Positions 476 through 21,363 of a stretch of DNA of 25,396 bases are shown here, piece by piece. Source of the DNA: Octopus sinensis. Lineage: Eukaryota. A model generated the notes under the pieces. It did not search any database. It was not told where the DNA came from and saw only the letters and a program-made list of their open reading frames with translations. The position numbers and the translations under genes were made by a program. The stretch lies in NCBI RefSeq assembly GCF_006345805.1, contig NW_021836098.1:1-25396 (forward strand), written 5' to 3'. The stretch's first letter is position 1. Every line of letters begins with the position of its first letter.

Positions 476-695
476 GTGATGAACAAGCAGAATTGTTACA
501 AAATGCCAGACAAAATACTTTTGCATCATTTCTTCCAAGTTTACATTTTGAGTTCAAATTCCACCAGGTTGATTTTGCCCCTCGTCCTTTTGGGATTGAT
601 AAAATAAGAACCAGTTAGGGCTGGGGGGTGACGTAATCAATTAACCCCCCCACCCAAAATTTCAGGCCTTATGCCTATAGTAGAAAGGATTATTA
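476..695 (+). mobile_element. SINE family A copy
   Basis: Colinear with 154-345 (gcagaattgtt..gagttcaaattccacc..gataaaataag..ccagtt..ggccttatgcc), ending in attattatt. Confidence 0.75.
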
Positions 696-722
696 TTATC
701 TTCAAAATTTACCAAAAAAATT

Positions 723-1150
723 TGGGGCATGGCTGTATGGTTAAGAAATTCACTTCAGAACCTTGTGGTCTCAGGTTCAGTCCCACTTTGCAGCACCTTA
801 AAGAATTAACTTCTTCTAATGTTCCAGGTTGACTCAAGCCTTGTGAGTGGGTTTCGTACATGGAACTGATAAATCCTATGGTATATACATGTGGGTGTAT
901 ATTCATGTATGCATATCTACATTTGTACATGTATGTGTATGCATGTGTGAGTGTGTGTGTGTGTGTGTGCATATGTCTGCTCACGTCTCCTTGTCTTGAC
1001 ATCTGCTGCGAATTATAAACAAATGTCACGTCAAACAAACAGAGTCGTTTGTTTGCAGTGTTCCACTAGAAAACATATCCAACCATTGTGCTGTTCATGT
1101 TGGAAGAACTTGGGGAAATATTCTCTTGCTTGAAACCAGGTGAGGATTGG
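723..1150 (+). mobile_element. tRNA-derived SINE (family B head) with internal (GT)n and a different 3' part
   Basis: ggcatggctgtatggttaag (A box) and ggttcagtccca (B-box-like); aagccttgtgagtgg is shared with 23398-23560. Confidence 0.6.
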
Positions 1151-1859
1151 TAAGCCTCATCGAGTGTAGTCATAGACTTGACTGAGTGGCACTCACAAGA
1201 ACCTGGCAAGAAACAAAACAAGATTATGAGAGAGAAAATACAAAAAAGAAAATACATCATCTGATGTATTATAAAGGTTTTGACATCCATTTTCCCTAAC
1301 TGGCATGGGTAGGACAGTTGACGAGGAAGCAGTGAACCAGAGGACATTGCTGAGCTCCAATGAAAGATTTGGCAAGATTTCTACAGCTGGATGATCTTCT
1401 TAACACCAGATGCACACACCATGTGTGTTTATGCGTGCATAAGAGTATATGAATGAATAAACATGGGTTTACTTATGTTTGATTGCACATCTGATTTTGT
1501 ATGCTAGCATGGGTTAGGTGAATATATTATTGTAGCCTTGTTTTACAGACAGACAGCCTTCTTATTGCTCACCCAAAACCATTTTGCAAGAACAAAAGTT
1601 CTTATTTCCCATGTCTTCCAAGGTGGGGGTGATTGGTTGACAGATGTTTCTGCTTGGAGCAACTTAAAAGAGATTGCAAACATAAACAAATGCACAGACA
1701 CCTACGCGCACACACACTCAGCTCGAGTTCACTGCTTCCTGTAGCAGAAACAGCTGGAAGCTAATGAAGGTGTCTACGTAACTCTTGTTCTTTTGTCGTT
1801 CATTGACATATTCATATCTATAAACATACATAGTACACATATTTATACACGGGTATGTG

Positions 1860-1927
1860 AAGGTATATATATTATATATATATACATATATATATATGAT
1901 ATATATATCATATATATATATATATCT

Positions 1928-1971
<44 letters not shown>

Positions 1972-1992
1972 ATATATATATATATATATATA
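1860..1992. repeat. (TA)n microsatellite
   Basis: Directly visible. Confidence 0.95.
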
Positions 1993-2006
1993 TCATCATC
2001 ACATCA

Positions 2007-2180
2007 TTTACCATCCGCTTTCCATGCTAGCATGGGTTGGACGGTTCAACTGGGGTTTGGGAAGCCAGAAGGCTGCACCATGCCCAGTCTGATCTGGCAA
2101 AGTTTCTACGGCTGGATGCCCTTCCTAACGCCAACCACTCCATGAGTGTAGTGGGTTCTTTTTACGTGCATCCAGCTGTA
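2007..2180 (-). mobile_element. SINE family C 3' part
   Basis: Near-identical to 24591-24765 (ccatgctagcatgggttggacggttc..ggatgcccttcctaacgccaaccactcc..tttttacgtg); the tail abuts (CAT)/(TA)n. Confidence 0.8.
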
Positions 2181-3456
2181 GAAAGAAAACCAGAAAATGT
2201 AACTTCAGGCAAGATATTCTTTGAACCATCCAACCAATTCCAGCATGGAAAGTGGGGGTAAAATGATGATCATCATACATACATACAGACATATGGATGT
2301 ATAATATACATATGTGCATCCGTGTGTATATATATACATGTATAAATATACATATGTGCATCCTTGTTATATATTATACACATTCATTCATATATATGTA
2401 TGCATGTGTATATAAATACATCTACAATTAGATTAAAGTCTAATTATTATGAAGGGTTTTGTAGGTTTTCTTCCCCAAAATAACCAAGTAGAATGGCACA
2501 AATGAAACATAAACATTCATTCCAATTTAATTTTACAATAGAAATATTTGCAATTATCTGCTTTTCTCTGTATAAACTTTGTTGTCAACAACAACAGCAA
2601 TACAACAACATAGCCTTATCCAGCTTTTCCCCAAAATATGTTGTTGTTTAGTCCATGTATATTCAAAGAGCTGACATCCTGAACAAGGTCTCTTTTATTT
2701 TTCATTCCTCCTGGGGTCAATAGAGTAACAGTCATTATTTCATAGACCAAGGAGGCGGTGGAGGATCATTCTGATGATGATGGGTCACCAGAATGTCATT
2801 AAACACACCCCACCAATATTTCCTAATCCACCTCATTAAACCCCCAATACTTCATAATAAACTACACCAAGTTATAACTCCTCACCTGACACAAAACAAA
2901 ACACACTTCACCTGCCAAACCCCTTTTTCATACAAACACATCTTTCTCATTGCTACCCAACATTGTCCCTTATATTAAAGATAATTAGGATGAACCTACC
3001 TTTCATTATATTGGGCTTATTCATTAACCAATCTTTATATCTCAATCAGCAACAAATAATAACGATCCTCTCAACATGCTGTCTATCAGTGTGTTATATG
3101 AAAGCCCATCTTTGGATAAGCTTTCAGTTAATCAATGTTGTGTATGATAATTGTGTGGATTATATTGAAATGTCGAGAGATTTACAGCATTTGTCAGGTT
3201 AAGAACAGTTTCATCTCCAGCTTTATTCGTATCTGTGAATCCAGGTAAATATGATGGAAACCAAGCCAACCATGACTGTCACATCATTTCCATGCATATA
3301 ATTATTAATAATACTTATATTCCTGATTTGTAGGGACGTGGTATTTCATTATGCAACCATAAATTCCTGTAAAATATATTAAATCGTTTAGAAGTCAACA
3401 CCACATTCTACTACTTTGTTAGCAGTGTTTTTCACATTATTCTATTGATATTCCAT

Positions 3457-3645
3457 AGAAATTATAGTTGGCTCTGATTTTTTTGCTAAAACTTTTCCTA
3501 TCGAGATGTCAGATGTAAACAAACAATGAGATAAACAATGAGAAACAAACAACAGATGTTTTTCTCTTTGATCTCATTGTTTGTTTCCGTCTGACATTTC
3601 GATATGAAATGTTTGTAGCAGGAAATCAGTCCTGGCTAAATTTCT
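3457..3645. mobile_element. Fold-back (palindromic) MITE-like element
   Basis: The arm 3457-3532 (agaaatt..ctgattt..gcta..atcgagatgtcaga..aaacaaacaatgagat) is the imperfect reverse complement of 3571-3645. The 38-nt spacer is also partly self-complementary. Confidence 0.65.
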
Positions 3646-3919
3646 ACCGATAATATCTGTAAAATAACCTCAACAAAATATTTATATTTCCTTCTTACTA
3701 CAAAACTTTTCACCATCACTTATATTCAGTCAATAAAGATAATGGTGTATTTATATCTTCAAGTTTTATTTCTAATGATTATTCCATTGAAAACAGTTTA
3801 AATGTTAACTTCACTGTCAAATAAACAATTTGTTTAATATATTTAATGAAATGTGTGTTTTCCTTGAAATTCTTTGAATGAATCAAGTAATATTATTTTA
3901 TCAAAAGCTTTTCACAAAA

Positions 3920-3945
3920 CTAATAAAGTTTTCATTTTATTTCAG
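3920..3945 (+). promoter_or_regulatory. Putative 3' splice site (branch point, pyrimidine tract, CAG) preceding the large coding exon
   Basis: CTAAT at 3920-3924, then ttttcattttatttCAG ending at 3945, 113 nt upstream of ATG 4059. A candidate donor CAG|GTAAAT lies at 3244/3245. Confidence 0.45.
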
Positions 3946-4058
3946 CTTTCATGTAAAAATTAGTGAATTTTGAAGAGATAAATTGTATTCCAAAGGAAGA
4001 AAAAAATCCACAGAAAAGATATATTTAACAGAAAAGATATAATTTCTATATTCATAAA

Positions 4059-7000
4059 ATGGAGAAGATTAATGAAGAAAACAAAATGTTGGCTCTCATT
4101 CCTGCCACAGTCTGTGATACAACAGCACATTTATAAGGAAACTACACCAATTCTTACCCAAATATTACATACACAAAACACAAAGAAAACAGAAGAACAG
4201 GAAAGAAAAGACACAAAGAAATCTAAAGAAACGAAAAGTCCATGTTACCAAGTTTCCTTCATATTGTGACATGTTACCGAACACTAATCAAAACAGACCA
4301 CATCAATACGTTTATAGATTATGTAAAGGATAAATGTAATCACATGGACCTCTCTGGTTTAAATGGATCTCAAATTTTACGTAATATCAAACGTAAAATG
4401 CCAAGATTTCTGGAAATTGCAGAACAAATAATGATTTTGTTCACCAAAACCTTGATTGGTTTCAACAAAGACTCTTTGACATTTATTCACCTGTAACCCA
4501 TACAACCACAAGACCATTGAACCACCAAAGTAACCACAAAATTTCGTCCTCTTCGGCCAGTTGTGACCAGAGAAGTAGAGATTGAGGAATCTGGTGAAGA
4601 CTTAAGCAACCCAATATCCAATATTGTTGTCATACAAGGGTATTGTAACATATTCCCACCACTTTATGACAATATGTTGTATACAAGAGACGGCAACAGA
4701 AACGATGTTCGTTGCTCATCTTCTGTCACTGATTTTACAAGAATCAGTGAAGACACAGTCCTCGCCACCCTGCCCTTCCGAAAAAATGATTCTTATTATC
4801 AACCCTTTAAGTTTGGAATCAAAAGAATTCAGCTAGGATTAATCTTGGTTTCTTATTTGAACATTCTACGCTTATAGGTGTAGAAATGTTTGGTCAGACC
4901 ATATACGTCATTGACTGGGAAGAGAATAGAATAAAATACGAATTCATAACCAAAAAACCCCTTCAGATATTGCTGTTGGAGCACAAAATAAACTCTTAGT
5001 ATCCTTTTCCAATATTAACAGGGTTACCTGTTACAATGTGGATGGTCAGCAGTTATTTGAGGTGGATACAAATTCCCTGGACATTCCAAGCCACATCTCT
5101 GTATACCAAAACCATTTTTATGTCCTTCAGGGACATATTATTTATCGGATATCAGGTACAGGTGCTGTGACAACAAGAGAAATTGGCATGAAATGCCGCC
5201 ATATTTCTGTTGGCAGAGAAAATATTTTTGTAACCAATTATTTTGATGTCCTTCATATCATTGGAACAAATGAAGACTTTTGGCCCAGGCAGTCACATAA
5301 CCCCCAGCTATGGACCCCAACATTGAACAGCTATATTTATATTGAGGATTGCTACAACATTACAAATATTCTACCTATGTCTACATCTTCTATATTAATA
5401 ATTTACAAAAACAAGAAAGCTAAATTATTCACTGATAATGGGGAAATAATTAACCAAAATAATTCAGTTTTCCTTGAGCTTCCTTCTTTCTGTTGTAGAA
5501 TAAACGCAAACAGATTCCTGGTATTTTATTGTGAAATGAAAGGATTTCAGTATATCACCTGTCCTGAACTAAGAAAAGGCCCTTTAATAAAGGTGCAAAC
5601 TGGTTACATGAAAATATGTCATATTGTATCAAATAAGTGTCTGGCTGTGACCACCACTAAAAACAAAAGCGAGGTCCATATCCTATTGATCAATGAAGAT
5701 AAAGTTGACATCGCAGAAAGAATTTCTCTGGGACATCATAATGTCAGCATTGCTGCAACTCCAATTAATTTTGTAGTCGTAGATGGAAACGAAAATAAAA
5801 TGGTATTTTATTCCACATGTGGTGAAGAACTTTTTCAAAAATACCTTCCATTCTATGGATACCCTCATCACATCTACTCTGATAATGTTTATTTCTATGT
5901 CCTCTTCAGGAGACACTCTATTCTCAGATGTTACGATCTATATGGACAAATGAAATGGCAGTGGGAACTGCCTTTCCCTGTTCACCCTCACATTGCTGTT
6001 TTCCAAGGAATTCTTTATGTCCCGGACACTCAACTCAACAGGGTTCTTCTTTACAAGTATCAAGACTGGTCGTCTGCTTGCCTTTTACCCATTAAAAATC
6101 CTTACATCAGAAATCTAAATCTACGTCTCAAAGAAAAGGAGAATGACCAAAAACTTGTCATAGGTGAAATATGTAATCTGTCCAATGGACAGTTGGTGGT
6201 GTCGGACATCAACCATGATTGCTTGTTGTACATTTCTGAGGAAGGAGACATTGTGTCCAGATTATCTCTGCCGTCTACAGCCACAGATATATGTCGATGG
6301 GATTCTAATCATATAGGGGTCACATTACCCCTACAGAAACAATTAAGGGTCATCGGAAACCTATCAAAGAGAGTGAGAAGTGTATCATTAAGGCAGCCTT
6401 ATGTACGGGTGTGTAAGATGGGTGAATGTGAAATTGTTTGTTATTGTGATAAACCATCACATTTAGACATTTTAGCCATCAATTATTATAATCAAGTTGA
6501 AGTAATTAAGACAATTAATATCCCTGTGTTTGTGAAATCATTATCAATAGACAAGAAAACAGAAAAGCTATTAATTGTTACTAGGGGAAAAGCTTTTCAG
6601 TACAACACTAGAATAGGTGGTGGTGGTCATCGTCGTCATCGTCTTCGTGGTGGTAAAACTAGATATAGTTATGCTAGTAGTATTAAGATGGTCCCCAGTG
6701 TTTTAATGTCCCAAGTGAAACGTCCCCTCAGTCTCCAAGGTGGATCTATTGACCAAACGTCTGTTTATCTGATAGACAGAAGCCGTATGTTTGCCATAAA
6801 CGATCAGAATTTGTTGGTTAATGATCTCGTTACTAATAATCAACTTAATTATTATATCGACCTGGTGGATGTATTTTCCAGACACATTTCTCTCAGTGAA
6901 ATTTTGTCTTCCACTTTATATCTACAGGACCTGACAGTTTCTGATAAAGCCAGACATATTCCTCTCCTAAACATTTGGGAGACAAAGAACCAGCGGGGAT

Positions 7001-9495
7001 TATCTCGTTGGTTCTTACTGAAAATAATCTGATTGCAGGATGGGACCAGACGAATGGAAACATTAAGATATTCACGTTGGATGGTCACCTTATGTATTCA
7101 ATCAAAGTGAATCATTGTTATTATATTAAAATGTGTCGATGGCATTCAAACACTCTGGTCATTATGAATTGGGATTATAAAGATGATAAATACCCACTGT
7201 TGACATTAAAAGTGGAATTTCCATTGTCGTTGGTAATTTACAAAACGAGAAATAATTATTATTGTGTGGCTTCTTTATCAAACAATCAACTGGTTTTGAG
7301 TAAATTGAGAGATGGAGGTCATTTGTATTTTGTTGATATTGATGAAATACATTCGAGTGTGAAGGAAATAAATAAAATAGACATACCTGAACCATTAATA
7401 ACGAGAGACGAAGATGGAGATTATTTTGATGACATCCTGGATATTAAAGTTACTGATGAAGATGTCATCATTGTCTTAAACACGAGATTCATCATTTTCT
7501 TCAACAGTGGTGGTCAATATTTACATTCAGTCAGACACTACATGGAGGATTATTTTGGTGATGTTTATGACAGGATGACAATTGATGACAGTTTTTTGTA
7601 CATTTATGGTCAGTGGCAGAAATCTTTTGGTTTATCTGAATATCGAAACATTTTGTGTTTGACCCAGAATGGGGAATACAAGAGAATATTTTTAAATGAA
7701 AGAATTTATAAAGATGAAGTAGAATTCTTCAGTATAGACTGTAAAGGACCAAGGTTTGTTGGAAGCCCCTGGAGTAGAAGGAATGAATTGTATGTTGAAG
7801 GGTTGTTTATGGTGAATCGAGACAGCTTCCCGGTTGCTCGTTTACAAACAGACGAATGTCCTGTTCAAGTAAAAGATTTTGATGTCTCTGAGGAAGGAAA
7901 GACAGTTGTGTGTGAAAAAGCCAATAATGGAAATGTTAAAATATTCGATGAAGACGGCCAGTTGCTACGTCACAGAAATGTTGCAAGTTTAGTTGGTGGT
8001 GTGTGTTTTACACAAGAATCACACATAATGGCCACGGTTCCTAAAAGGAAAGAAATATTTCAACTGAATGGAGAAGATTTGCAGACATCTCAAGTTTGCT
8101 CGAGTCTCATCCCTTATGGTGTAATATGGAGAAAAGTGGCGGGTATTTACTGGTGTGTACATAATGAATTGATTGAATGTCATTGCATAAAGATTGATGG
8201 GGACCAAGTGAACATTCTGGAATCTGTGTCATTATTAATCTTGATTCTGGTCTTCGTTTCCCTTCCATTACATCTGAAACGAACAAGGAAATATTCAGTA
8301 ATGAATTAATTAATAAATTGGAATACAGAGGAGAGATGGAGATGGAGGAAGAAGAAGAAGAGGTAAATCAGGTGAAATAATTGGTAAAGGTAGATTAAAG
8401 GTGAGATGTGGTAATTACATAGCAGAGATTAATAATTCAGGAATTGATGAAATATCAGTGAGGAGACTTCCATATAGGACAGCAATGGTCCCTTTTTCCA
8501 TTCCTGCATTCGAGGAACCTCTTGATTATGATTGTGGGGACATTAGGGACCGGAACAGTAAACTAATAAAGTTAGATGAGAATGTGAGTGTGTTGATTTT
8601 TCGAGAAAGTGTCACATTAATCAGAACAACAACAACAACAACAGTGGACATACTTCAACATGAACAACAAAAACGACCAGCACTGGATATATGTCGGTGG
8701 ACAGAGGAATGTTTCATTGTCGCCTTTGGGAGAGAAATGAGGGTCTTCAACAGGGATCTCCGTCGTTTAAAAACCATCAGAACTGAGAAATACTACAACA
8801 GGATTTATAAATACAACGACAATCAACTCGTGTGTGGTGGTCATTATATTAGAGACATAACTCAAGAAGAGAGACACGAGAAATACGAAAGAATGTGGGA
8901 GAACAAGTATTACTATATTTGCATTGACCCCGACATCTTTGACCCTTATTATGTGGATGTGGTTGATATCAAAGATGGGAAATGTAAAGATGAAGTGTGT
9001 TGTGGGAAGATGAGGAGACGGGGAAGGTTTGAGGGAGACAAAGGGGTGGATGGTGTGGGAATCACATCTTTTGGTGATGTTGTTGTTGTGAGGAGGGAGA
9101 TGGAGGATAAGGAGGACTCTGGAGATTGGGAAATTTTGTGTTTTGTGGAATGGTTCAGGGAAAAGTCTTTGGTGAGGAGGATAAGCATAGGAGAAAGAAG
9201 GTTTGTTGGTCAGGAATATTGTATTCCAAGACTTCGTCTGACCATAATTGGTGAATGTGTTTATATAACAGATTCAAGAAACAATATTTACGAAATACCT
9301 AGACATATTGAAGAGGAAACATCTGAAGATGATGAAATCCGGGGATTAAAAGATAATCCAAAATATTTACTCCTCAGAGGGGATGATAATGAAGTCGTTG
9401 AACTTCTTGGTTTGGATGTTTCAGACAATTCTTTGATGGTTTTTGGAATTATTCCTGGACGTCAATCTTTTGCTTTCTTTTATTTTGACAAATAA
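4059..9495 (+). CDS. Reconstructed single-exon gene (frameshifted in this sequence): ~1,800-aa protein with six tandem NHL/TolB-like six-bladed beta-propeller modules
   Basis: The stop-free stretches 4930-7032, 6948-8309 and 8317-9495, plus short bridging frames (4811-4999, ~8229-8380), join by single-base shifts. A blade motif recurs six times: VTDFTRI/FCCRI/DICRW/KMCRW/GVCFT/DICRW at 4725/5488/6286/7128/7998/8686. NHL-like strings include TPSDIAVGAQNKLLVSFSNINRVTCYNVDG and IAVFQGILYVPDTQLNRVLLY. The start ATG at 4059 (ataaaATGG) is tentative. Confidence 0.65.
4521..4999 (+). CDS. Frameshifted first part of propeller module 1
   Basis: ..VTDFTRISEDTVLATLPFRK, then a shift at A6 (4781-4786) to MILIINPLSLES, a shift at A4 (4821-4824) to KNSARINLG..GQTIYVIDWEENRIKYEFITKK, and a shift at A6C4 (4952-4961) to TPSDIAVG. 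Confidence 0.6.
4930..7032 (+). CDS. Propeller gene fragment: end of module 1, modules 2 and 3 (ORF track 5038..7032 extends upstream without a stop to 4930)
   Basis: 2.1 kb open frame in AT-rich DNA. Contains PSDIAVG..NKLLVS, LELPSFCCRINANRFLVFY and GEICNLSNGQLVVSDINHDCLLYISEEGDIVSRLSLPSTATDICRWDSNHIGVTLPLQKQL, which match the propeller pattern of molluscan TRIM/NHL-like proteins as I recall it. Confidence 0.8.
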   Translation, partial: NKIRIHNQKTPSDIAVGAQNKLLVSFSNINRVTCYNVDGQQLFEVDTNSLDIPSHISVYQNHFYVLQGHIIYRISGTGAVTTREIGMKCRHISVGRENIFVTNYFDVLHIIGTNEDFWPRQSHNPQLWTPTLNSYIYIEDCYNITNILPMSTSSILIIYKNKKAKLFTDNGEIINQNNSVFLELPSFCCRINANRFLVFYCEMKGFQYITCPELRKGPLIKVQTGYMKICHIVSNKCLAVTTTKNKSEVHILLINEDKVDIAERISLGHHNVSIAATPINFVVVDGNENKMVFYSTCGEELFQKYLPFYGYPHHIYSDNVYFYVLFRRHSILRCYDLYGQMKWQWELPFPVHPHIAVFQGILYVPDTQLNRVLLYKYQDWSSACLLPIKNPYIRNLNLRLKEKENDQKLVIGEICNLSNGQLVVSDINHDCLLYISEEGDIVSRLSLPSTATDICRWDSNHIGVTLPLQKQLRVIGNLSKRVRSVSLRQPYVRVCKMGECEIVCYCDKPSHLDILAINYYNQVEVIKTINIPVFVKSLSIDKKTEKLLIVTRGKAFQYNTRIGGGGHRRHRLRGGKTRYSYASSIKMVPSVLMSQVKRPLSLQGGSIDQTSVYLIDRSRMFAINDQNLLVNDLVTNNQLNYYIDLVDVFSRHISLSEILSSTLYLQDLTVSDKARHIPLLNIWETKNQRGLSRWFLLKII
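6948..8309 (+). CDS. Propeller gene fragment: module 4 and first part of module 5
   Basis: 1.3 kb open frame overlapping the previous one in the -1 frame. Contains IISLVLTENNLIAGWDQTNGNIKIFTLDG..KMCRW and VKDFDVSEEGKTVVCEKANNGNVKIFDEDGQLL..GVCFTQESHIMATVPKRKEIF. Confidence 0.8.
   Translation, partial: SQTYSSPKHLGDKEPAGIISLVLTENNLIAGWDQTNGNIKIFTLDGHLMYSIKVNHCYYIKMCRWHSNTLVIMNWDYKDDKYPLLTLKVEFPLSLVIYKTRNNYYCVASLSNNQLVLSKLRDGGHLYFVDIDEIHSSVKEINKIDIPEPLITRDEDGDYFDDILDIKVTDEDVIIVLNTRFIIFFNSGGQYLHSVRHYMEDYFGDVYDRMTIDDSFLYIYGQWQKSFGLSEYRNILCLTQNGEYKRIFLNERIYKDEVEFFSIDCKGPRFVGSPWSRRNELYVEGLFMVNRDSFPVARLQTDECPVQVKDFDVSEEGKTVVCEKANNGNVKIFDEDGQLLRHRNVASLVGGVCFTQESHIMATVPKRKEIFQLNGEDLQTSQVCSSLIPYGVIWRKVAGIYWCVHNELIECHCIKIDGDQVNILESVSLLILILVFVSLPLHLKRTRKYSVMN
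8317..9495 (+). CDS. Propeller gene fragment: end of module 5, module 6 and the true stop codon
   Basis: Open from 8317 to TAA 9493-9495. Contains ALDICRWTEECFIVAF, KYYNRIYKYNDNQLVCGG and GECVYITDSRNNIY. The sequence gatatatgtcggtgg (8686-8700) matches module 3 gatatatgtcgatgg (6286-6300) at 14 of 15 nt. Confidence 0.8.
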   Translation: MGIQRRDGDGGRRRRGKSGEIIGKGRLKVRCGNYIAEINNSGIDEISVRRLPYRTAMVPFSIPAFEEPLDYDCGDIRDRNSKLIKLDENVSVLIFRESVTLIRTTTTTTVDILQHEQQKRPALDICRWTEECFIVAFGREMRVFNRDLRRLKTIRTEKYYNRIYKYNDNQLVCGGHYIRDITQEERHEKYERMWENKYYYICIDPDIFDPYYVDVVDIKDGKCKDEVCCGKMRRRGRFEGDKGVDGVGITSFGDVVVVRREMEDKEDSGDWEILCFVEWFREKSLVRRISIGERRFVGQEYCIPRLRLTIIGECVYITDSRNNIYEIPRHIEEETSEDDEIRGLKDNPKYLLLRGDDNEVVELLGLDVSDNSLMVFGIIPGRQSFAFFYFDK

Positions 9496-9515
9496 ATATT
9501 TCCAGAAATATTAAA
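9491..9515 (+). terminator. Candidate polyadenylation signals of the propeller gene
   Basis: AATAAA at 9491-9496 overlaps the TAA stop; ATTAAA at 9510-9515. Such hexamers are common by chance in AT-rich DNA. Confidence 0.25.
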
Positions 9516-9877
9516 CTTCAATCTTCTTCTTCTTATTGTTGTTGTTGTTGTAAATGGCTTCGCCCGGGAATCGAACCTGCATCGCATACATTACATTCTA
9601 CACACTAACACTTATTGTTGTAACATTCCTCAACACTCTCTCTTTGTGTGTGTGTATATATTTATGTACAGTATATGTACATGTGTTTATATATATACAC
9701 ACATATTTAGGCATGTATGTATAGAAATAAGGCTATAAATATGTATGTTTGTGTGTGTGTATATACGCATGTATATATATGTATATATATATATATATAC
9801 GCATGCATGTATGTATAGGAATGTCTGGTCCGAAAGCAGAGACTTTCATAATCATTGATTCTCCATTAAAAGGCAGA

Positions 9878-10253
9878 CGACCACCGCCGCCGTATCCGCC
9901 GTCGTCGTCGTGGTGGTCGTCGTCGTCGTGGCCGTCTCCGCCGTCGTCGTGGCCGTCTCCGCCGTCGTCGTCGTCTCCGCCGTCTCCGCCGTCGTCGTCG
10001 TGGTGGTCGTCGTCGTCGTCGTGGTGGTCGTCGTCGTCTCCGCCGCAGTCGTCGTCGTCGTGGCCGTCGTCGTGGCCGTCTCCGCCGCCGTCGTCGTGGT
10101 CGTCGTCGTCTCCGCCGTCGTCGTCGTAGCCGTCTCCGCCGTCGTCGTCGTGGTGGTGGTCGTCGTCGTCGTCGTCGTCATCATCATCATCACCATCACC
10201 ATCACCATCATCATCATCGTCATCATCACCATCATCATCATCGTCATAATCAC

Positions 10254-10286
<33 letters not shown>

Positions 10287-10435
10287 ATCGTCGTCATCAT
10301 CATCATCATCGTCGTCATCATCACCATCATCATATCGTCGTCTCACCATCATCACCATCATCATCATCACCATCATCACCATCATCATCACCATCATCAT
10401 CATCACCATCATCATCATCATCGTCGTCATCAGCG
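9878..10435. repeat. Compound triplet array: (GCC/GTC/GTG)n grading into (ATC/ACC)n
   Basis: Directly visible. The ORFs at 9749, 9852 and 9910 are low-complexity by-products. Confidence 0.95.
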
Positions 10436-10579
10436 TCGTGTGTGCGTGTGTGCAGTCTGCATCTGACAGTTTTTAACGTTTAATAAGAATAGATTGTTGT
10501 TGTTGTTGTTGTTGCAGTGACATTCCAACTGCACACACGCACAAACATTGCCTTTCGTCCTCGTAGGGTTGTTGTTGTG

Positions 10580-10960
10580 GGTTCATAAAAAAAGAGAAAG
10601 ACACTTTAAGAAGCATTCAGTAAAAGCATTCCCATAGCTGGTCATTTTTCACGCTAGAAATAAAACCACTTTACTTTTCATATAAATTTGAAGGACACTT
10701 TAAGAAGCATCATAAATAAATTGACCTGTATATGGTCTCATTTCATGCTAGAAAGAGCCACAAAACCTTCACATTTTTGTCTCATCACAAATAAAAATCC
10801 AAGGACAATTTACAAACATCCATGTCAAATATTGTCCTATAGATGCCTAACATCATGCTAGAAATAACAGCCAAATACTCTGAAATTTGTATCGTTTTTC
10901 ATAAAAAAAGTGAAGGACACTTTAAGAAGCAACTCTAAAAATATTGTCCTGCGGCGGTTA
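10580..10960. repeat. Degenerate ~94-112-bp tandem repeat, about 3.5 copies
   Basis: gacactttaagaagca at 10600, 10694, 10804 (variant) and 10916; ca(c/t)gctagaaa recurs once in each complete unit. Confidence 0.7.
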
Positions 10961-12119
10961 AGTGTAAAATTTATAAAAGTATGCATTTATGAGTTTTTAT
11001 GTGTGTTTAAAAAACATAGCAAAGACGTGTGTATGTAGGTATATACATGTGTATAAAGGTATTTTTGTATAAATATGGGTATTTTTGAATGAAATTTGGT
11101 AGAAATAACTTTCAAACGATGTAGATTACGATTAAAAAGAAATTTGTTGGCAAAATGTTTTGTAAGGGTTCGAGGGAAAAGGTGTGTGATTTAAGGGAGA
11201 TTTGGCTGTTGTTTCTAGCACTCCCCCCTCCTTGTCTTTTTTTTTTTTCTCATTTTTTCCCTCAGAAACACATTTATGTTATAAAAAAATAAAAAGAATA
11301 TTTAAAAAATCTCTGATTATTTTTAGCCCCACTTCCTGGCCCCCGATTCTTTCTCTTTATATAATTGTAAAATATTGGAGAGCCTGAGAAGATTCTTGCT
11401 GGGATTTATCCACAGGGATTTAAATAAGAGCTTTGTAAAAGAGGATTTCTTTTGAGAGCATCCTTTTCTGTTAGAAAATGAAAGTGGAAGTTTCATTAAA
11501 AATATCCATTTTCCTGGAAGTTATGAGGAAACAAAGTCGATGGGGTGTTCATCTGTAGTTATGCCACAGGATGTATATATATATATATATATAACTGTAG
11601 AAATGTAGGTGTGTATATATATATTATATGTATGTGTGTTTGTGTATACATTTATTCATGTATATGTACAAGTTTAAAAAAGAAATATCAAAAGATGTTG
11701 GAATATTTGAGGTATTGGATAATTTCCGACTCTATTGTATAGGATTGCCGATACATTTATATAGGAATATAAATATACATCATTACTATACCCACAGGAA
11801 AGCAGAATATTATACATACATACATATTCATATATAAACTCAAATATATATACATATAATTATACATTATTATACGTAGACTTCTTGCACACATAGAAAA
11901 GACGACGGGTAAATCCATCTGTGACAACCCATGCTTAAGGGTATCTGGTGATATTTCGGGTCTGGTATCATACAAACTGCCCAGTCTGGAGTCTCTCTAT
12001 AACTTCTGCCGCTTCCCGTTCAATTGTTTCTATTTGTCGCTTAGCAACGCTAATTTGAATGACAAAAAACGTGGAGAAAAAGGCGGGAAAATGTATGTAT
12101 AGATGTATATATATGTATA

Positions 12120-12152
<33 letters not shown>

Positions 12153-12324
12153 ATAATCGGATGAGTATGAATATATATATATACACATAGAGAGATACAT
12201 ACACGGAATCTATCTATATATATATGTATGTATGTATATGTGGATGTGTATGAATATCTATATACATATATAGAGAGAGAAATATAAAGTCGAGAGACTG
12301 ATGTATATACGGAATCTATCTCTC

Positions 12325-12358
12325 AGACTAAGTGTATGTCTGTCTTTTTTTCTATCTG

Positions 12359-12391
<33 letters not shown>

Positions 12392-12560
12392 GTATCTATC
12401 TATCTATCTATCTTTCTCTGTCTGCATTTGTGTGCTTGTTTCTCTCTCTCTCCCTCTTTTCTCTTTCTATCTACCTCTCTTACAGTCTATATATTTGACT
12501 GTCTGTCTGTCTGTCTCTCCTTCTCTCTCTCTCTCTCTATCTATCAATCTATCATCTCTC
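12325..12560. repeat. (TATC)n / (TC)n / (TGTC)n microsatellite cluster
   Basis: Directly visible. Confidence 0.9.
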
Positions 12561-12977
12561 TCCTTCTCTCCATAATACGCTACGGTGTTATAATATGTAC
12601 ATTTCGCTATTGTGTGTGGCAAGATGGTGTTGGTCTGATGTGTACGTTTATAGTCGTTCACAAATCCATTGTGGGGTGCATTCGATTGCATTCTGTGGTT
12701 CCCCAGCCACATGGGAGAAGTGCAAAGGCAAGCCGAAACGATAATCGTGCTAAAGATAGCTTCCAGCACACTCTGCCTTCCCTATCAATTCTTTAAAACA
12801 TACTGAACGTGCACCGAGGAATTCCTTACGTAGACCCTGCGACTACAGTGCAGCCGCTGCGGACGACACCTGGTAACCGTATGTGGTGAAGGTGCACTCA
12901 ACGCACACGACTAGGGACATACCCAAAACAACGGGTGGACACGACATTTTAAAGTCTCCTATGTATTGTATGGATAT

Positions 12978-13200
12978 TCTTTATTTTTGTACTTAAGTCA
13001 TTTTGACTGAGGCCACGCTGGAGCACCGCCTTGAAGGGTTCATTTAATCAAAAACATCGACACCAGGACTTATTAAGCCTTGTACTTAACCTATCGGTCG
13101 TCTTTGCCGAACTACTAAGTGACATAGACGTAAACATAGAGACATCGGTTGTCAAGCGCTGGTGAGGGGAGGAGATAGACACACACACACACACACACAC
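12978..13200 (-). mobile_element. SINE family B 3' part
   Basis: The reverse complement matches 23855-24030 (gacaaccgatgt..agttcggcaaa..aataagtcctgg..ggcggtgctccagc). Confidence 0.75.
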
Positions 13201-13213
13201 ATATACCCAATAG

Positions 13214-14895
13214 GCTTGTTAGCAGAGTTACAGGCCGAAAGTTATCAACAATGTCCCCCTTGTTCGGATCCTTCCTCAATGGCATCACCACACCTTGGCT
13301 CACAGTTCTGCTGCCTGTTGCGTTAGACATCTTGCAAAATCTCACCAGACAAGTCTAGCATATGAATATAAATTTCGAAGGGCAAACCATCCAATCCCGG
13401 AGACTTCTCCTTCCTGCAAGTCTCCAGTGCATCTCTCGTATATCTTCCGCTGTTATTGGAATTTCGCATAATTCCACATCCTTGGCCAAGAGCTGCAGCA
13501 GTCCATCGAGGTAGGAGGTGGAGTTCACCCCCGCCTCCGAACCACTGTGCGCCTCGTATAGTTCAGCAAAGTGCTGCTGAAATTCCGTACAAATCTGCTT
13601 GGAATCGTGTAACAAGCACTCATCCCAACCCATCAAACACCAAATTGTAGTTTTAGGGCCATGTTGCACCTCGGCATACCAGTTGCCCACTAACTCTAAG
13701 GGGCGAGAAATCCCAAGGAAGTCCTCCAAGCGTGTCTGACATAATTGGATGTGTTCTATTAATTCATTACTTTTTGTACTTATAGCCATGAGATTAATAA
13801 TGTCTGGTTTATGGTCATTTGGTGGAATGAAGTGCGTCTGTTGTGTATGGAGGCTATGTTGTGTTTGTGATGGTTGTAGATGTGGTGGTGGTAGTGGTGG
13901 GGATGATGTTAGTGTTGCCTCTGTGTGTGTGTGTGTGTGTGTATGCATGGTGTGCTATTCTTACTGCACCTTCCCTCCTCCATTTTCTTGGACGTTTTTC
14001 TTTTCTGGTTATCGTTTGTGCTCTTCCGTCTTTTCCTTCCTTTCCCTGTGACTCTTTCACATGCCTGTCCCTCCTTATTTCTCTCATTTTCCTTAGCTGA
14101 ATAGGGGACGGGTATTTCTTCTGCAGGTATTTGTTTTACTGTTGGCGCTGTTAACAGTGTTGTCATTATTTTTGGTGGGGGGGGGGTTCCCTGTTGCTGC
14201 TGCTGCTGTGCATTCTGCCTGACATTATGCAGTTGTTTCCATTCCAGTCGATGTTGTAGCTGCAGCTGCTGCCGGGGCTGTTGTGGTTTTTGTGAATGTT
14301 CTTATGTCCAATTGTCTCTGTTGCTGCCCTTCTTGTGGTGTCTGTTGTTATTGTGGTTGCAGTGGTGTTAATGGTTGCTGTGGATCATTTTTTCCCCTTT
14401 TCTTCTTTCCCTCAGACTATAGACTCTGACCTGAATCACCACAGAAGTAACATCGTGGCCTTCTTCCTTCCACGATTACCTGAAGATGCTTGCCTCCAGG
14501 GATTTCTATTATGTCGGGAATTTTCTCTATAGTTTCTGGTTTTACTTGCAGTAGAATTTTTGACCCTGTCCCACCCTAGTTCATCCCTTGGGATTTTCTT
14601 TTATTTCTAGGAGGCTTCTAGAATCTTCCAGCACCACGGCTTTCACTACCCACCGGAAATCGATTTCTGGTGGTATTTTACTTATATTTATTTGGAGCAC
14701 TCTCTGTCCCAAATAGATAGCATTTAAAGAGAACTCTTCCATTTTTAATGGGACAGTTGAATGTTTATGTGTTAGTGATTCCGACTGGAATATGACCTTG
14801 ATGTAGCCAAACTTTGGGGCATGGCAAACAAAGCTGACATCTCCCAATATATTTTTCAGGCACAGCTCGGCTTGCTCTGATGGTAATTTTTCCAT
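13214..14895 (-). mobile_element. Decayed L1/Tx1-like LINE: ORF1 with zinc-knuckle remnant, joined to the pre-RT/RT start of ORF2 (endonuclease missing)
   Basis: ORF1-like MEKLPSEQAELCLKN..PKFGYIKVIF (14895-14581) and KIPDIIEIPGGKHLQVIVEGRRPRCYFCGDSG (14536-14417). ORF2-like CTEFQQHFAELY..CEIPITAEDIRE and SQGVVMPLRKDPNKGDIVDNFRPVTLL (to ~13214). Several stops and shifts. Confidence 0.75.
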
Positions 14896-16261: not shown

Positions 16262-16334
16262 TATGTTAATATATATTATATACATATATAATCAGTGTAT
16301 TGGCTTTAGAATAATCTTCTTTAGCCCTTAATTA

Positions 16335-16375
<41 letters not shown>

Positions 16376-16440
16376 TTGTACATATATATATATATATATA
16401 TTTCTTTGGATGCATATATGATTGATTGATTGATTGATTC

Positions 16441-16480
16441 CAGTTTCAGCTTATAGCTGTGGCCATGCTGGGGCACCGCC
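16441..16480 (-). mobile_element. 40-nt copy of the LINE/SINE 3' tail
   Basis: The reverse complement ggcggtgccccagcatggccacagctataagctgaaactg matches 16209-16247. Confidence 0.7.
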
Positions 16481-16864
16481 ATTTATATTATACAAATATT
16501 AATTCATTTAATGGGATTAATCGATATGCGGGTATTCTATTTCAGATAATACAAAATAACCTAATGAAATACAATTTTTCAACTGGAATTTTCAAAAGGT
16601 TTGTGACTGATTTCCAACATTTTCGGTTCCATGTTTTCTTGACAAAGATTTACACTACAGTGAAATGCAGGGTAAATATAATCTTCACAGTATTAGTAAA
16701 TGTGTATTAACCCATAATTTCTTAATCTGATAAGTGTGAGTGAGGAAAATTTCTAAGTGCAATTTTTCATTTCACGATTCTCAAAATATTTGCTGATTAT
16801 TTCAAACATTTACAGTCCTCGTCTTTTCCGATAAATCGATACATGCCTCTTGACCTTACAAGGT

Positions 16865-20714: not shown

Positions 20715-20757
<43 letters not shown>

Positions 20758-20940
20758 TATAATAATAATAATAATGATAATAATAATAATAATAATATAA
20801 TATAATAATAATAATGATAATAAAATAATAATAATGATAATAATAATAATAATAATAATAATATAATAATAATAATGATAATAATAATAATATAATAATA
20901 ATATATAATAATAATGATAATAATAATAATAATAATAATG

Positions 20941-20974
<34 letters not shown>

Positions 20975-21049
20975 TATAATAATAATATAATAATAAATAA
21001 TGATAAAATAATAATAATAATAATAAATAATAATAATAATAATAATATG

Positions 21050-21085
<36 letters not shown>

Positions 21086-21363
21086 TAATAATAATAATAA
21101 TAATGATAATAATATAATAATAATAATAAAATAATATAAAATGATAATAATAATAATAATAAGATAATACTAATAATAATAATAATAAATAATAATAAAA
21201 TAATAATAATAATAATAATAATAATAAGATAATAATAATAATAATATGATAATAATAATAATATATAATAATAATAATAATAATAATAATGATATAATAT
21301 AATATAATAATAAAATATAATAATAATAATGATAATAATAATAATAATAATAGATAATATATA

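What the first reader, a model, noticed from the sequence alone, without database searches (positions are those of the whole stretch)
4059..9495. Hidden ~1,800-aa single-exon protein built from six tandem beta-propeller modules
Seen: five ORF-track entries and two unlisted bridging frames join into one reading frame with six modules of the same blade order. Blade 1 is I..I..l.ng.lvv.D..n..l.if...G. Blade 2 is VTDFTRI..VLATLP / FCCRI..FLVFY / TDICRW..IGVTLP / KMCRW..LVI / GVCFT..IMATVP / LDICRW..FIVAF at 4725, 5488, 6286, 7128, 7998, 8686 (spacing about 690-870 nt). Blade 3 is GYMKICHIVSNKCLAV / PYVRVCKMGECEIVC / YYCVASLSNNQLVL / PYGVIWRKVAGIYWC / YYNRIYKYNDNQLVC. Knowledge: TRIM-NHL proteins (Brat, LIN-41/TRIM71, TRIM2/3) and the expanded molluscan B-box proteins normally carry one C-terminal propeller behind RING/B-box/coiled-coil. 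Inference: this is a stand-alone six-propeller array whose modules are very divergent from each other. It could be a lineage-specific multivalent sensor or scaffold (innate-immune ligand or RNA binding) that annotation would fragment or miss.
Basis: partly seen in the sequence, partly recalled or inferred. Interest (0 to 1): 0.88.

Follow-up and report, generated by a model that had tools for sequence, protein, structure and literature searches.

The report
Octopus six-propeller gene family member
This stretch is one copy, with a broken reading frame in this assembly, of an octopus-only family of about 1,800-residue proteins built from six tandem NHL-type beta-propeller modules; two modules evolve unusually fast, which suggests a so far undescribed binding or sensor protein.

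Summary
But window 4059-9495 is not one open frame. It reads as an 1,803-codon protein only after 14 frame changes (15 segments), with no in-frame stop. Eleven shifts lie in a stretch (2700-4953) with more small indels than substitutions, which looks like assembly error.

Intact relatives show the protein is real. P0044 (1,798 aa, 91% identical) is one uninterrupted exon in Octopus vulgaris. At least 17 full-length models exist in three Octopus species and Argonauta. None was found elsewhere among 1.84 billion proteins.

AlphaFold models are all-beta and match multi-propeller proteins (LRP2, DDB1). The modules are homologous to the single C-terminal propeller of a cuttlefish RING/B-box TRIM protein (HHalign 97%). 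The only PDB sequences matching at E below 0.05 are TRIM-NHL domains. Module 5 is only about half a propeller.

The family is under coding constraint (dN/dS 0.2-0.6). Between two intact recent paralogues, modules 4 and 6 have dN/dS 2.3 and 3.2. Synonymous divergence is mosaic, which points to gene conversion.

Best reading: a lineage-specific intracellular multivalent binder or sensor; function untested. Intact paralogues are already annotated as "uncharacterized", and I found no paper on them.

The parts
3935..3945 (+). Putative splice acceptor (TTTTATTTCAG) about 115 nt upstream of the ATG. It suggests an upstream non-coding or mini 5' exon, with the whole protein in one last exon.
   Evidence: Read directly from the sequence. 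The paralogue models P0033 and P0034 take only their first 2 and 7 residues from a distant upstream exon. DNA homology to the older copy L003 starts at 3828. Not verified with transcripts.
4059..4559 (+). N-terminal non-propeller region (aa 1-164): hydrophilic, Lys/Glu-rich and partly helical. It is the most variable part between subfamilies. Five of the 14 frameshifts lie here (4128, 4232, 4426, 4488, 4532).
   Evidence: Stitching against P0001 and P0005. AF2 predicts helices at P0008 residues 2-33. There is no Pfam hit, only weak coiled-coil-like PDB hits at E 0.2, and no similarity to the TRIM N-terminus. There is no signal peptide or TM segment.
4560..5349 (+). Module 1 (aa 165-424), propeller-like, containing VTDFTRI at 4725. 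Six frameshifts lie here (4638-4953).
   Evidence: AF2 on P0008 gives pLDDT 75-87 and 23 short strands, about six 4-stranded blades. HHalign M1-M2 is 90% over 185 columns.
5350..6144 (+). Module 2 (aa 425-689), propeller-like, containing FCCRI at 5488. It is open in frame 1.
   Evidence: AF2 gives pLDDT about 75-87 and 22 strands. HHalign M2-M4 is 86% over 179 columns.
6145..6986 (+). Module 3 (aa 690-969), containing TDICRW at 6283. It is the most conserved module. It ends in a low-complexity Gly/Arg/Ser linker (about 6600-6700) of variable length between copies. A frameshift lies at about 6962.
   Evidence: Entropy profile. HHalign M3-M6 is 95%, M3-M4 87%, and M3 against the Sepia TRIM propeller 79%. 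AF2 confidence is low here (pLDDT 30-55). L001 has a 192-nt insertion at 6630.
6987..7841 (+). Module 4 (aa 970-1254), containing KMCRW at 7128. It is a hypervariable module.
   Evidence: AF2 gives pLDDT 77-91 and 23 strands. HHalign against the Sepia RING/B-box TRIM propeller is 97%, E 5e-11, over 202 columns. dN/dS is 2.27 between the intact P0044 and P0047. Variability is enriched in predicted loops (P 0.007).
7842..8234 (+). Module 5 (aa 1255-1385), containing GVCFT at 7998. It is a short module of about 11 strands and is nearly identical among paralogues.
   Evidence: AF2 on P0024 gives 11 strands at pLDDT 30-72. HHalign M4-M5 is 92% over 93 columns. dS is 0.05 or less even between paralogues whose M4 and M6 have dS 0.3-0.4.
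8237..8400 (+). Predicted disordered linker (aa 1386-1439), Gly/Arg-rich. It is reached through frameshifts at about 8236 and 8337.
   Evidence: AF2 gives pLDDT 21-33 and coil. Frameshift-aware alignment to P0024.
8401..9492 (+). Module 6 (aa 1440-1803), containing LDICRW at 8683. It is a large propeller-like module with hypervariable patches and ends in the conserved C-terminus ...FAFFYFDK.
   Evidence: AF2 gives pLDDT 74-93 over much of it and 27 strands. HHalign M4-M6 is 93% over 166 columns. dN/dS is 3.21 between P0044 and P0047.
9491..9496 (+). AATAAA hexamer overlapping the TAA stop codon (9493-9495); a possible polyadenylation signal.
   Evidence: Read from the sequence. Homology to the older paralogue L003 ends at 9691. 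Not verified with transcripts.

Best explanation
Window 4059-9495 is one member of an Octopoda-restricted multigene family.

Architecture and origin (shown):
- Each gene carries its whole coding sequence of about 5.4 kb in one exon.
- It encodes a soluble protein of about 1,800 residues that is probably intracellular.
- The protein has a hydrophilic, partly helical N-terminal segment of about 165 residues followed by six tandem homologous modules of the NHL (six-bladed beta-propeller) type.
- Four of the modules look like complete propellers (M1, M2, M4, M6). M3 is modelled with low confidence, and M5 is about half a module followed by a disordered linker.
- The module descends from the single C-terminal propeller of cephalopod RING/B-box TRIM proteins. 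It was duplicated six times in series, and the RING and B-box were lost.

Family evolution (shown):
- The family grew by segmental duplication, mostly on one small chromosome.
- It stays under coding constraint and exchanges module-sized pieces by gene conversion.
- Amino-acid change is faster than silent change in modules 4 and 6.

Function (inferred):
- The protein acts as a multivalent binding platform.
- The conserved modules (M3, M5) give a constant framework or docking surface.
- The fast-evolving modules (M4, M6) recognise changing ligands, either proteins or RNA, as NHL propellers do in TRIM-NHL proteins. This fits a sensor or restriction-type role in a genetic conflict.

State of the copy in this window: it is frame-broken in 14 places. 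At least the 11 breaks between 4128 and 4953 are most likely assembly errors, so the gene may be intact in the animal.

The confidence of 0.6 is for the whole statement. I put the architecture and family part at about 0.85-0.9 and the sensor function at about 0.3.
For: Stitched reading:
- 1,803 codons, 14 frameshifts and no in-frame stops.

Intact relatives:
- P0044 (1,798 aa, 91% identical) is a single uninterrupted ORF at L004:10001-15397.
- P0047, P0074 and P0081 are also single ORFs.
- P0033 and P0034 have all but 2 and 7 residues in one exon.

Family size and range:
- More than 100 gene models clustered at 90% identity, including at least 17 of 1,700 aa or more.
- The exhaustive HMMER search of 1.84e9 proteins finds 32 hits. 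Family members come only from Octopus and Argonauta hians. The next best hits are a Sepia TRIM-NHL (E 8e-5) and weak bacterial WD40 proteins.

Six homologous modules:
- HHalign probabilities of 86-95%, in register.

NHL and TRIM origin:
- M4 against the Sepia RING/B-box/NHL protein gives 97%, E 5e-11. M3, M5 and M6 give 79-84%.
- The family profile against PDB hits only TRIM71, Brat, TRIM3, TRIM2 and Thin NHL domains.

Fold:
- The AF2 models are all-beta with runs of 4-strand units. pLDDT is 75-90 in M1, M2, M4 and M6.
- Foldseek top hits are LRP2 YWTD arrays, DDB1, CPSF160 and Sevenless at E 1e-14 to 1e-20.

Selection:
- Long-range dN/dS is 0.24-0.57.
- Between the intact P0044 and P0047, M4 has dN/dS 2.27 (P 0.027) and M6 has 3.21 (P 0.010). 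Combined, P is 8e-4. M1-M3 and M5 have 0.3-0.5.
- dS is mosaic: M1 is 0.69 against 0.02-0.06 elsewhere, and M5 is always 0.05 or less.
- Variable sites in M4 are enriched in predicted loops.

Duplication mode:
- The window and L004 share more than 12 kb at 89-94% identity, including flanks.

Localisation:
- There is no signal peptide or TM-like segment.

Assembly error:
- In 2700-4953 the window has 28 private 1-2-nt indels against 23 private substitutions, in coding and non-coding DNA alike. In 4954-9495 it has 6 against 94.
- dN/dS in the frameshift-dense part is still 0.15-0.29.
Against: - There is no expression, localisation or ligand data of any kind. Function is inferred only from architecture and substitution patterns.
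- The dN/dS above 1 result rests on pairwise Nei-Gojobori counts from a few close paralogues. Gene conversion from divergent donors could inflate local dN without selection on this lineage. No recombination-aware codon model was run.
- AF2 confidence is low for M3, M5 and the linkers (mean pLDDT 61-63). Blade numbers come from strand counts, not from inspected coordinates.
- Pfam's NHL model does not reach its threshold on any member. The best is P0081 at 18.5 bits against a cut-off of 20.
- The nearest O. vulgaris locus, L001, which is syntenic with the window, also carries 10 frameshifts and 2 stops. So this particular locus could be a real pseudogene.
- Three frameshifts (6962, 8236, 8337) lie outside the indel-rich stretch.
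Confidence: 0.6

Rival explanations
1. The copy in this window is a dead pseudogene of the family. The frameshifts are real mutations, and nothing functional is encoded here, whatever the intact paralogues do.
For: - The window has 14 frameshifts.
- The syntenic O. vulgaris locus L001 is also broken, at different places: 10 frameshifts and 2 stops.
- L001 against L004 gives dN/dS of about 1.0 overall.
- Many family gene models are fragments.
- Three window frameshifts (6962, 8236, 8337) lie in a stretch with an otherwise normal ratio of indels to substitutions.
Against: - There is no in-frame stop in 1,803 stitched codons.
- dN/dS is 0.15-0.39 for the N-terminus through M3, including the part with 11 frameshifts.
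- Small indels outnumber substitutions (28 to 23) in 2700-4953, and the excess runs on into non-coding flank. That is not a natural mutation spectrum and looks like an unpolished long-read consensus.
- None of the window's frameshifts is shared with L001.
Confidence: 0.35
2. The protein is a constant structural or scaffolding component, for example cytoskeletal, ciliary or neuronal, like other multi-propeller proteins. It is not a variable recognition molecule. The fast change in M4 and M6 reflects relaxed constraint and gene conversion.
For: - Foldseek's nearest multi-propeller architectures (DDB1, CPSF160, IFT-A) are scaffolds.
- dN/dS in M4 and M6 falls below 1 (0.46-0.83) in older comparisons.
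- Mosaic dS shows that conversion is active.
Against: - Scaffolds of that kind are usually single-copy and widely conserved. This family has dozens of young copies and no orthologue outside Octopoda.
- dN/dS of 2.3-3.2 exceeds the neutral expectation between two intact genes (combined P 8e-4).
- Variability falls in discrete patches within an otherwise conserved framework.
Confidence: 0.25
3. The ORF belongs to a transposable or otherwise selfish element, which would explain the many copies, the single exon and the dispersal to several chromosomes.
For: - The family is multi-copy, with single-exon ORFs on at least 8 chromosomes or scaffolds.
- Older copies share only the ORF plus about 200 nt on each side (window 3828-9691 against L003).
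- The window is rich in repeats and holds a LINE reverse-transcriptase fragment.
Against: - No member contains a reverse transcriptase, integrase, transposase or other mobile-element domain.
- No LTRs or terminal inverted repeats bracket the ORF.
- Young copies share more than 12 kb of flanks, as in segmental duplication.
- The divergent member P0081 has counterparts in all three Octopus species, grouped in one 90%-identity cluster.
- The protein is a propeller array related to a host TRIM gene.
Confidence: 0.04
4. The ORF-track pieces are separate small genes, one or two modules each, and not parts of one protein.
For: In this window and in L001 the annotation-style ORFs are separate. L001 is annotated as three genes of 827, 121 and 477 aa.
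Against: - Homologues read straight through every junction.
- Uninterrupted ORFs of 1,662-1,801 codons exist in P0044, P0047, P0074 and P0081.
- The junctions are 1-2-nt shifts, not intergenic spacers.
Confidence: 0.02

Closest known systems
Cephalopod and molluscan TRIM proteins with a C-terminal NHL-like propeller (for example Acanthosepion/Sepia pharaonis CAE1315789.1, P0095: RING, B-box, helical region, one propeller)
   Same: The propeller module is homologous. HHalign of M4 against the P0095 C-terminus gives 97%, E 5e-11, over 202 columns at 26% identity. It has the same motif order: 'vvsD..n..l..F..dGq', then 'GICLW....VVTLP', then 'Y.sVAS....LVCS'. It is also the only non-family animal protein found by the exhaustive search (E 8e-5).
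   Different: The TRIM has one propeller behind a RING and a B-box (Pfam hits). The octopod family has six modules in series and no RING or B-box. Its N-terminus shows no detectable similarity to the TRIM N-terminus.
Canonical TRIM-NHL proteins (TRIM71/LIN-41, Brat, TRIM2, TRIM3, Thin)
   Same: They are the only solved structures whose sequences match the family profile, through the blade-1 motifs of M3, M4 and M5 (TRIM71 E 9e-4, Brat E 2e-3). From established knowledge, they have a six-bladed NHL fold, and Brat and LIN-41 use the top face of the propeller to bind RNA.
   Different: The match is marginal and limited to single blades. Pfam NHL is below threshold on all members. They have a single propeller and an E3-ligase N-terminus, are conserved across animals and are low-copy. 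RNA binding was not tested here.
LDL-receptor family YWTD propeller arrays (LRP2/megalin, LRP1, LRP4/5/6; also Sevenless/ROS1)
   Same: They are the best Foldseek matches (E 1e-20 and 1e-14). They contain several six-bladed propellers strung along one chain.
   Different: Those proteins are extracellular, with a signal peptide, a TM segment and EGF and LDL-A modules between the propellers. Here there is no signal peptide or TM, and no Ldl_recept_b or EGF Pfam hit. Sequence affinity is to NHL, not YWTD. TM-scores are low (0.12-0.17) because only the domains match, not their arrangement.
Intracellular multi-propeller scaffolds (DDB1, CPSF160, IFT-A subunits, EML and WDR90-type proteins)
   Same: They carry several propellers in one cytoplasmic or nuclear polypeptide and appear among the Foldseek hits (E 1e-13 to 1e-18).
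   Different: They are seven-bladed WD40-like propellers, single-copy and ancient. There are no WD40 Pfam hits here. They are not expanded or fast-evolving.
Rapidly diversifying intracellular sensor families (TRIM5-type restriction factors, NLRs with variable repeat domains): a functional analogy only
   Same: They are clustered and lineage-specific in their expansion. They combine a conserved framework with discrete hypervariable patches, dN/dS above 1 in the presumed binding part, gene conversion between paralogues and many broken copies.
   Different: There is no sequence or domain relationship. There is no NACHT, SPRY or LRR domain, and no effector domain was recognised. No immune function was tested.

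Membership tests
TRIM-NHL proteins | N-terminal RING finger | tested here: not met
   Pfam finds no RING hit on the window pieces or on the full-length members P0044, P0042, P0036, P0074 and P0069. The Sepia TRIM P0095 does hit zf-C3HC4 in the same kind of search.
TRIM-NHL proteins | B-box zinc finger(s) | tested here: not met
   No zf-B_box hit on any member. P0095 hits it at E 3e-7.
TRIM-NHL proteins | Coiled-coil between the B-box and the C-terminal domain | tested here: inconclusive
   The N-terminal 165 aa are partly helical in AF2. They give only weak coiled-coil-like PDB hits (E 0.2). HHalign to the P0095 N-terminus gives 0.3% probability.
TRIM-NHL proteins | One C-terminal NHL propeller | tested here: not met
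   There are six homologous modules in series, not one.
NHL repeat / six-bladed NHL propeller (Pfam PF01436) | Sequence match to the NHL repeat model above the curated threshold | tested here: not met
   The best is P0081 at 18.5 bits against a cut-off of 20 (E 0.002). There is nothing on the window pieces or on P0044.
NHL repeat / six-bladed NHL propeller (Pfam PF01436) | Homology to bona fide NHL propellers by profile methods | tested here: met
   HHalign of M4 against the propeller of a RING/B-box/NHL protein gives 97%, E 5e-11. M3, M5 and M6 give 79-84%. All PDB hits of the family profile at E below 0.05 are TRIM-NHL NHL domains.
NHL repeat / six-bladed NHL propeller (Pfam PF01436) | Six four-stranded blades closing into a propeller | tested here: inconclusive
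   By AF2 strand counts, M1 has 23, M2 has 22 and M4 has 23 strands at pLDDT 75-90, which is consistent with six blades. M3 has 18 strands at low pLDDT, M5 has only 11, and M6 has 27. Coordinates could not be inspected. Foldseek matches propeller arrays.
LDL-receptor class B (YWTD) propeller arrays | YWTD/Ldl_recept_b repeats with EGF modules, a signal peptide and a TM anchor | tested here: not met
   There are no such Pfam hits and no hydrophobic N-terminus or TM-like segment. The resemblance is in fold only.
WD40 propeller proteins | WD40 repeat matches | tested here: not met
   Only sub-threshold hits were found (ANAPC4_WD40 at 17.7 bits against 22.9 on P0042). Bacterial WD40 proteins appear only at E 5e-6 to 7e-4 in the exhaustive search, through single-blade matches.
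Transposable element ORF | Catalytic domain (RT, integrase or transposase) and terminal repeats or target-site duplications | tested here: not met
   No such domain is present. No LTR or TIR lies around the ORF. Duplicated units include more than 12 kb of flanks.

The most novel reading that the evidence does not exclude
Octopods evolved, from the propeller of a TRIM gene, a new class of intracellular recognition molecules: one chain carrying six NHL-type propellers. Conserved modules (M3, M5) form a constant frame, and hypervariable modules (M4, M6) are diversified by positive selection. Modules are reshuffled between dozens of clustered paralogues by gene conversion. This would be a germline-encoded variable sensor array for viruses, transposons or foreign RNA in an animal without adaptive immunity.
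Probability: 0.25. Interest if true: 0.85.

Novelty: new variant of a known kind. Interest (0 to 1): 0.6.

Why it matters
Cephalopod genomes are known for a few very large lineage-specific expansions, namely protocadherins, C2H2 zinc fingers and GPCRs. This would add another: dozens of 5.4-kb single-exon genes restricted to octopods. Its domain architecture, six NHL-type propellers in series with no other recognised domain, matches no described family that I could find in Pfam, in PDB or in the searchable literature.

The contrast between near-frozen modules and modules with dN/dS above 1, together with module-scale gene conversion, is the signature usually seen in recognition molecules caught in a genetic conflict. 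Octopus innate immunity and antiviral or anti-transposon defence are poorly understood, so this family gives concrete candidates to test.

It also shows how a TRIM propeller can be freed from its ubiquitin-ligase part and multiplied. On the practical side, the family is a trap for assembly and annotation. Many deposited models are fragments or fusions with neighbouring zinc-finger genes, and the copy in this window carries what look like uncorrected consensus errors.

Tried and rejected
- Pfam on all window pieces and on five full-length relatives gave nothing above threshold.
- phmmer of the 700-aa piece against PDB gave only TRIM3 at E 0.79.
- Self-BLASTP of the stitched protein found no internal repeat. 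A first HHalign with shallow module profiles gave weak links for M1 and M2. The repeat became clear only with deeper profiles.
- There are no DNA-level repeats between modules and no LTRs or TIRs bracketing the ORF. The modules are therefore old duplications, and the transposable-element reading is rejected.
- No tRNA gene is present.
- Searches for relatives outside octopods, by two word-indexed searches and one exhaustive HMMER search, found none. The exhaustive search used only an M4-M6 profile, so a remote relative of M1-M3 alone could have been missed.
- Literature searches for octopus with NHL, TRIM or propeller, and for six LOC identifiers, returned nothing relevant.
- I looked for transcript-derived family members among short hits, but all came from genome annotations. 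No expression evidence was obtained.
- An early BLASTN table mixed loci L002 and L003 because they share one file. This was corrected.
- The source assembly of the window was not identified. No deposited protein is 100% identical. The closest are O. vulgaris P0005 at 98% and O. sinensis P0015 at 96%.
Full report
**What the window is.** The window is repeat-rich animal DNA at 29-48% GC, with long microsatellites and a LINE fragment. Window 689-16667 aligns in six blocks at 93-98% identity with Octopus vulgaris chromosome OX597841.1:9255978-9278461 (locus L001). It is therefore an Octopus genome, from O. vulgaris or a very close relative. The exact assembly was not identified.

**Checking the observation.**
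- The claim of one reading frame does not hold. The three forward frames each hold only pieces. The long open ones are 4930-7029 (700 aa), 6948-8306 (453 aa) and 8317-9492 (392 aa).
- I aligned homologous proteins to the DNA with a frameshift-aware aligner. A continuous protein of 1,803 residues can be read from ATG 4059 to the stop after 9492, but only with 14 frame changes.
- Eleven of these lie between 4128 and 4953. The others are near 6962, 8236 and 8337.
- There is no in-frame stop along this path.

**Whether the long protein is real.** It is.
- Searches of the protein collection returned only Octopus proteins, all named "uncharacterized" or "hypothetical" and almost all without any Pfam domain.
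- Many are fragments, but at least 17 are 1,700-1,925 residues long.
- The closest intact one, P0044 (1,798 aa, 91% identical to the stitched window protein), is one uninterrupted ORF of 5,397 nt about 300 kb from L001 on the same chromosome.
- P0047, P0074 and P0081 are also single uninterrupted ORFs. P0033 and P0034 have all but 2 and 7 residues in one exon.
- A polypyrimidine-CAG acceptor at 3935-3945 and an AATAAA at the stop codon fit a gene whose whole coding sequence lies in its last exon. This is an inference, with no transcript data.

**Whether the window copy is broken or mis-assembled.** I polarised differences among the window, L001 and L004.
- In 2700-4953 the window has 28 private 1-2-nt indels, mostly deletions, against 23 private substitutions. 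The excess runs through non-coding flank and coding sequence alike.
- In 4954-9495 it has 6 small indels against 94 substitutions.
- More small indels than substitutions is not a natural mutation spectrum. In the same frameshift-dense part, dN/dS is only 0.15-0.29.
- I therefore think the 5' cluster of 11 frameshifts is consensus error.
- The other three frameshifts are undecided. L001 carries its own, different set of 10 frameshifts and 2 stops, so a real pseudogene at this locus cannot be excluded.

**The six modules.**
- Self-BLAST and DNA repeat finders see nothing, so the repeat is old.
- Profile-profile comparison of six slices of a family alignment, with 50-57 sequences each, links all of them in register:

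| Pair | HHalign probability | Aligned columns |
|---|---|---|
| M1-M2 | 90% | 185 |
| M2-M4 | 86% | 179 |
| M3-M4 | 87% | 118 |
| M3-M6 | 95% | 70 |
| M4-M5 | 92% | 93 |
| M4-M6 | 93% | 166 |

- Module 5 is short, with about 130 residues of beta structure. It is followed by a Gly/Arg-rich stretch of about 55 residues that AlphaFold leaves disordered.

**Fold.**
- AlphaFold2 was run on two deposited family proteins that together span the whole architecture. P0008 covers the N-terminus to M5, and P0024 covers M3 to the C-terminus. The alignments held 52 and 47 relatives.
- The models are almost entirely beta, made of runs of short strands. Mean pLDDT is 63 and 61.
- pLDDT is 75-90 in M1, M2, M4 and much of M6, but only 30-55 in M3, M5 and the linkers.
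- Strand counts are 23, 22, 18, 23, 11 and 27 for M1 to M6. That fits six four-stranded blades for M1, M2 and M4, and says little for M3 and M5.
- Foldseek against the PDB gives multi-propeller proteins as best matches for both models. These are LRP2/megalin, DDB1, CPSF160, Sevenless/ROS1 and IFT-A, at E 1e-13 to 1e-20.
- TM-scores are low, as expected when domains match but their arrangement does not.

**What kind of propeller.**
- A profile of the full-length family, searched against all PDB sequences, hits at E below 0.05 only NHL domains of TRIM-NHL proteins. These are TRIM71 at 9e-4, Brat at 2e-3, and TRIM3 and TRIM2. The matches run through the first-blade motifs of M3, M4 and M5.
- The exhaustive HMMER search, using an M4-M6 profile against 1.84 billion representatives, found 32 hits. 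They are family members from Octopus and from Argonauta hians (P0079, 1,913 aa), a divergent Octopus member (P0081) with a near-threshold Pfam NHL hit, one Sepia pharaonis protein (P0095, E 8e-5), and weak single-blade matches to bacterial WD40 proteins.
- P0095 is a RING, B-box and NHL protein of 656 residues.
- Its C-terminal propeller aligns with M4 at 97% HHalign probability (E 5e-11, 202 columns). It aligns with M3, M5 and M6 at 79-84%, and weakly with M1 and M2.
- The modules are therefore serial copies of a cephalopod TRIM propeller.
- The RING and B-box are absent. The N-terminal 165 residues show no similarity to the TRIM N-terminus.
- There is no signal peptide or membrane segment, so the protein is probably intracellular. 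This is an inference.

**How the family evolves.**
- The window and L004 share more than 12 kb at 89-94% identity, including flanks, so young copies arise by segmental duplication.
- An older copy, L003 in O. sinensis, keeps similarity only from 3828 to 9691.
- About 42 of the gene models retrieved lie on the 29-Mb O. vulgaris chromosome OX597841.1, at positions from 9.3 to 22.7 Mb. Others lie on at least seven other chromosomes or scaffolds.
- Over long distances dN/dS is 0.24-0.57, so the ORFs are maintained by selection.
- Between the two intact paralogues P0044 and P0047, dN/dS is 0.3-0.5 in M1-M3 and M5. It is 2.27 in M4 (62 non-synonymous against 7 synonymous changes, P 0.027) and 3.21 in M6 (49 against 4, P 0.010). 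Combined, P is 8e-4.
- The window copy shows the same pattern against P0044 and P0047.
- The changes fall in discrete hypervariable patches within a conserved framework. In M4 they are enriched in predicted loops (P 0.007).
- Synonymous divergence is mosaic. M1 has dS 0.69 where the rest of the same gene pair has 0.02-0.06. M5 never exceeds 0.05, even when the flanking modules reach 0.3-0.4. This indicates module-scale gene conversion, with M5 homogenised across the family.

**Interpretation.**
- Shown: a lineage-restricted, expanded, single-exon gene family; six homologous NHL-type modules derived from a TRIM propeller; coding constraint overall; and excess amino-acid change in M4 and M6.
- Inferred: the protein is an intracellular multivalent binder. 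M3 and M5 would act as a constant frame, and M4 and M6 as variable recognition surfaces. NHL propellers bind RNA or proteins in TRIM-NHL proteins (established knowledge, not tested here).
- A sensor or restriction role in a genetic conflict fits the evolutionary pattern, but nothing here tests it.
- Rivals: this copy may be a true pseudogene (0.35, not exclusive of the family-level reading); the protein may be a constant scaffold with relaxed modules (0.25); it may be a transposable-element ORF (0.04; no catalytic domain, no terminal repeats, flanks duplicated); or the pieces may be separate genes per module (0.02; refuted by the intact ORFs).

**Novelty.**
- Beta-propeller arrays and NHL propellers are well known. 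The proteins themselves are already in public databases as uncharacterised predictions.
- I found no Pfam family, no solved structure and no paper describing six NHL-type propellers in series, or describing this octopod family.
- I rate it a new variant of a known kind, of moderate to high interest. The main weakness is the complete lack of expression and functional data.

Noticed in passing
window 2700-4953: This stretch has more private 1-2-nt indels (28, mostly deletions) than private substitutions (23) relative to two O. vulgaris loci. It runs across non-coding flank and coding sequence alike, and looks like locally unpolished assembly consensus.
   Followed up: yes
window 6600-6700 (aa about 846-870); L001 12562-12765: A low-complexity Gly/Arg/Ser linker lies between M3 and M4, and its length varies between copies. 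L001 and P0001 carry a 192-nt Ser/Gly-rich expansion here. The DNA resembles the CGT/TCA trinucleotide array downstream of the gene.
   Followed up: partly
window 7842-8234 (module 5) and the same part of P0033, P0034, P0044, P0047: Module 5 is almost identical among paralogues (dS 0.05 or less), even where the neighbouring modules have dS 0.3-0.4. This points to concerted evolution by gene conversion or to nucleotide-level constraint. The cause is not resolved.
   Followed up: partly
window 9900-10432: A degenerate trinucleotide array of about 530 nt, (CGT)n then (TCA)n, lies immediately downstream of the gene. It produces long artefactual ORFs on both strands.
   Followed up: no
window 9553-9590: A tRNA-like sequence (GGCTTCGCCCGGGAATCGAACCTGCATCG) lies just after the gene. 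It may be a tRNA-derived SINE fragment. ARAGORN calls no tRNA anywhere in the window.
   Followed up: partly
window 15179-15706 (+), with neighbouring ORFs 13355-16176: A reverse-transcriptase fragment (Pfam RVT_1, E 9e-11), which is a LINE-type retroelement remnant. The adjacent ORFs have no Pfam hit.
   Followed up: partly
window 20715-22419: A 1.7-kb (ATA)n microsatellite of about 583 units. GC falls to 3-11% across it.
   Followed up: no
window 24855-25396: A tandem repeat with a 159-nt unit, 3.4 copies at 97% identity, runs off the end of the window. A related 65-nt repeat lies at 24744-24890, and similar sequence recurs in L003 (one search printed these hits under L002 because the two loci share one file).
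   Followed up: no
proteins P0029, P0112, P0085, P0114, P0076 (O. vulgaris and O. sinensis gene models): Some deposited family models are fused to C2H2 zinc fingers, a DUF4371 domain or ankyrin repeats. These are probably mis-joined neighbouring genes, which suggests the cluster is interspersed with zinc-finger genes.
   Followed up: no
L002 18571-22943 (O. vulgaris OX597817.1): A degenerate family copy (55% aa identity to P0044, 5 frameshifts and 2 stops) lies inside the range of a deposited 20-kb multi-exon gene model (P0011). That model appears to splice around the defects.
   Followed up: partly
P0079 and P0098 (Argonauta hians): The Argonauta homologues (1,913 and 1,925 aa) start with a tandem peptide repeat, (ADNTRMV)n, that is not seen in the Octopus members.
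   Followed up: no
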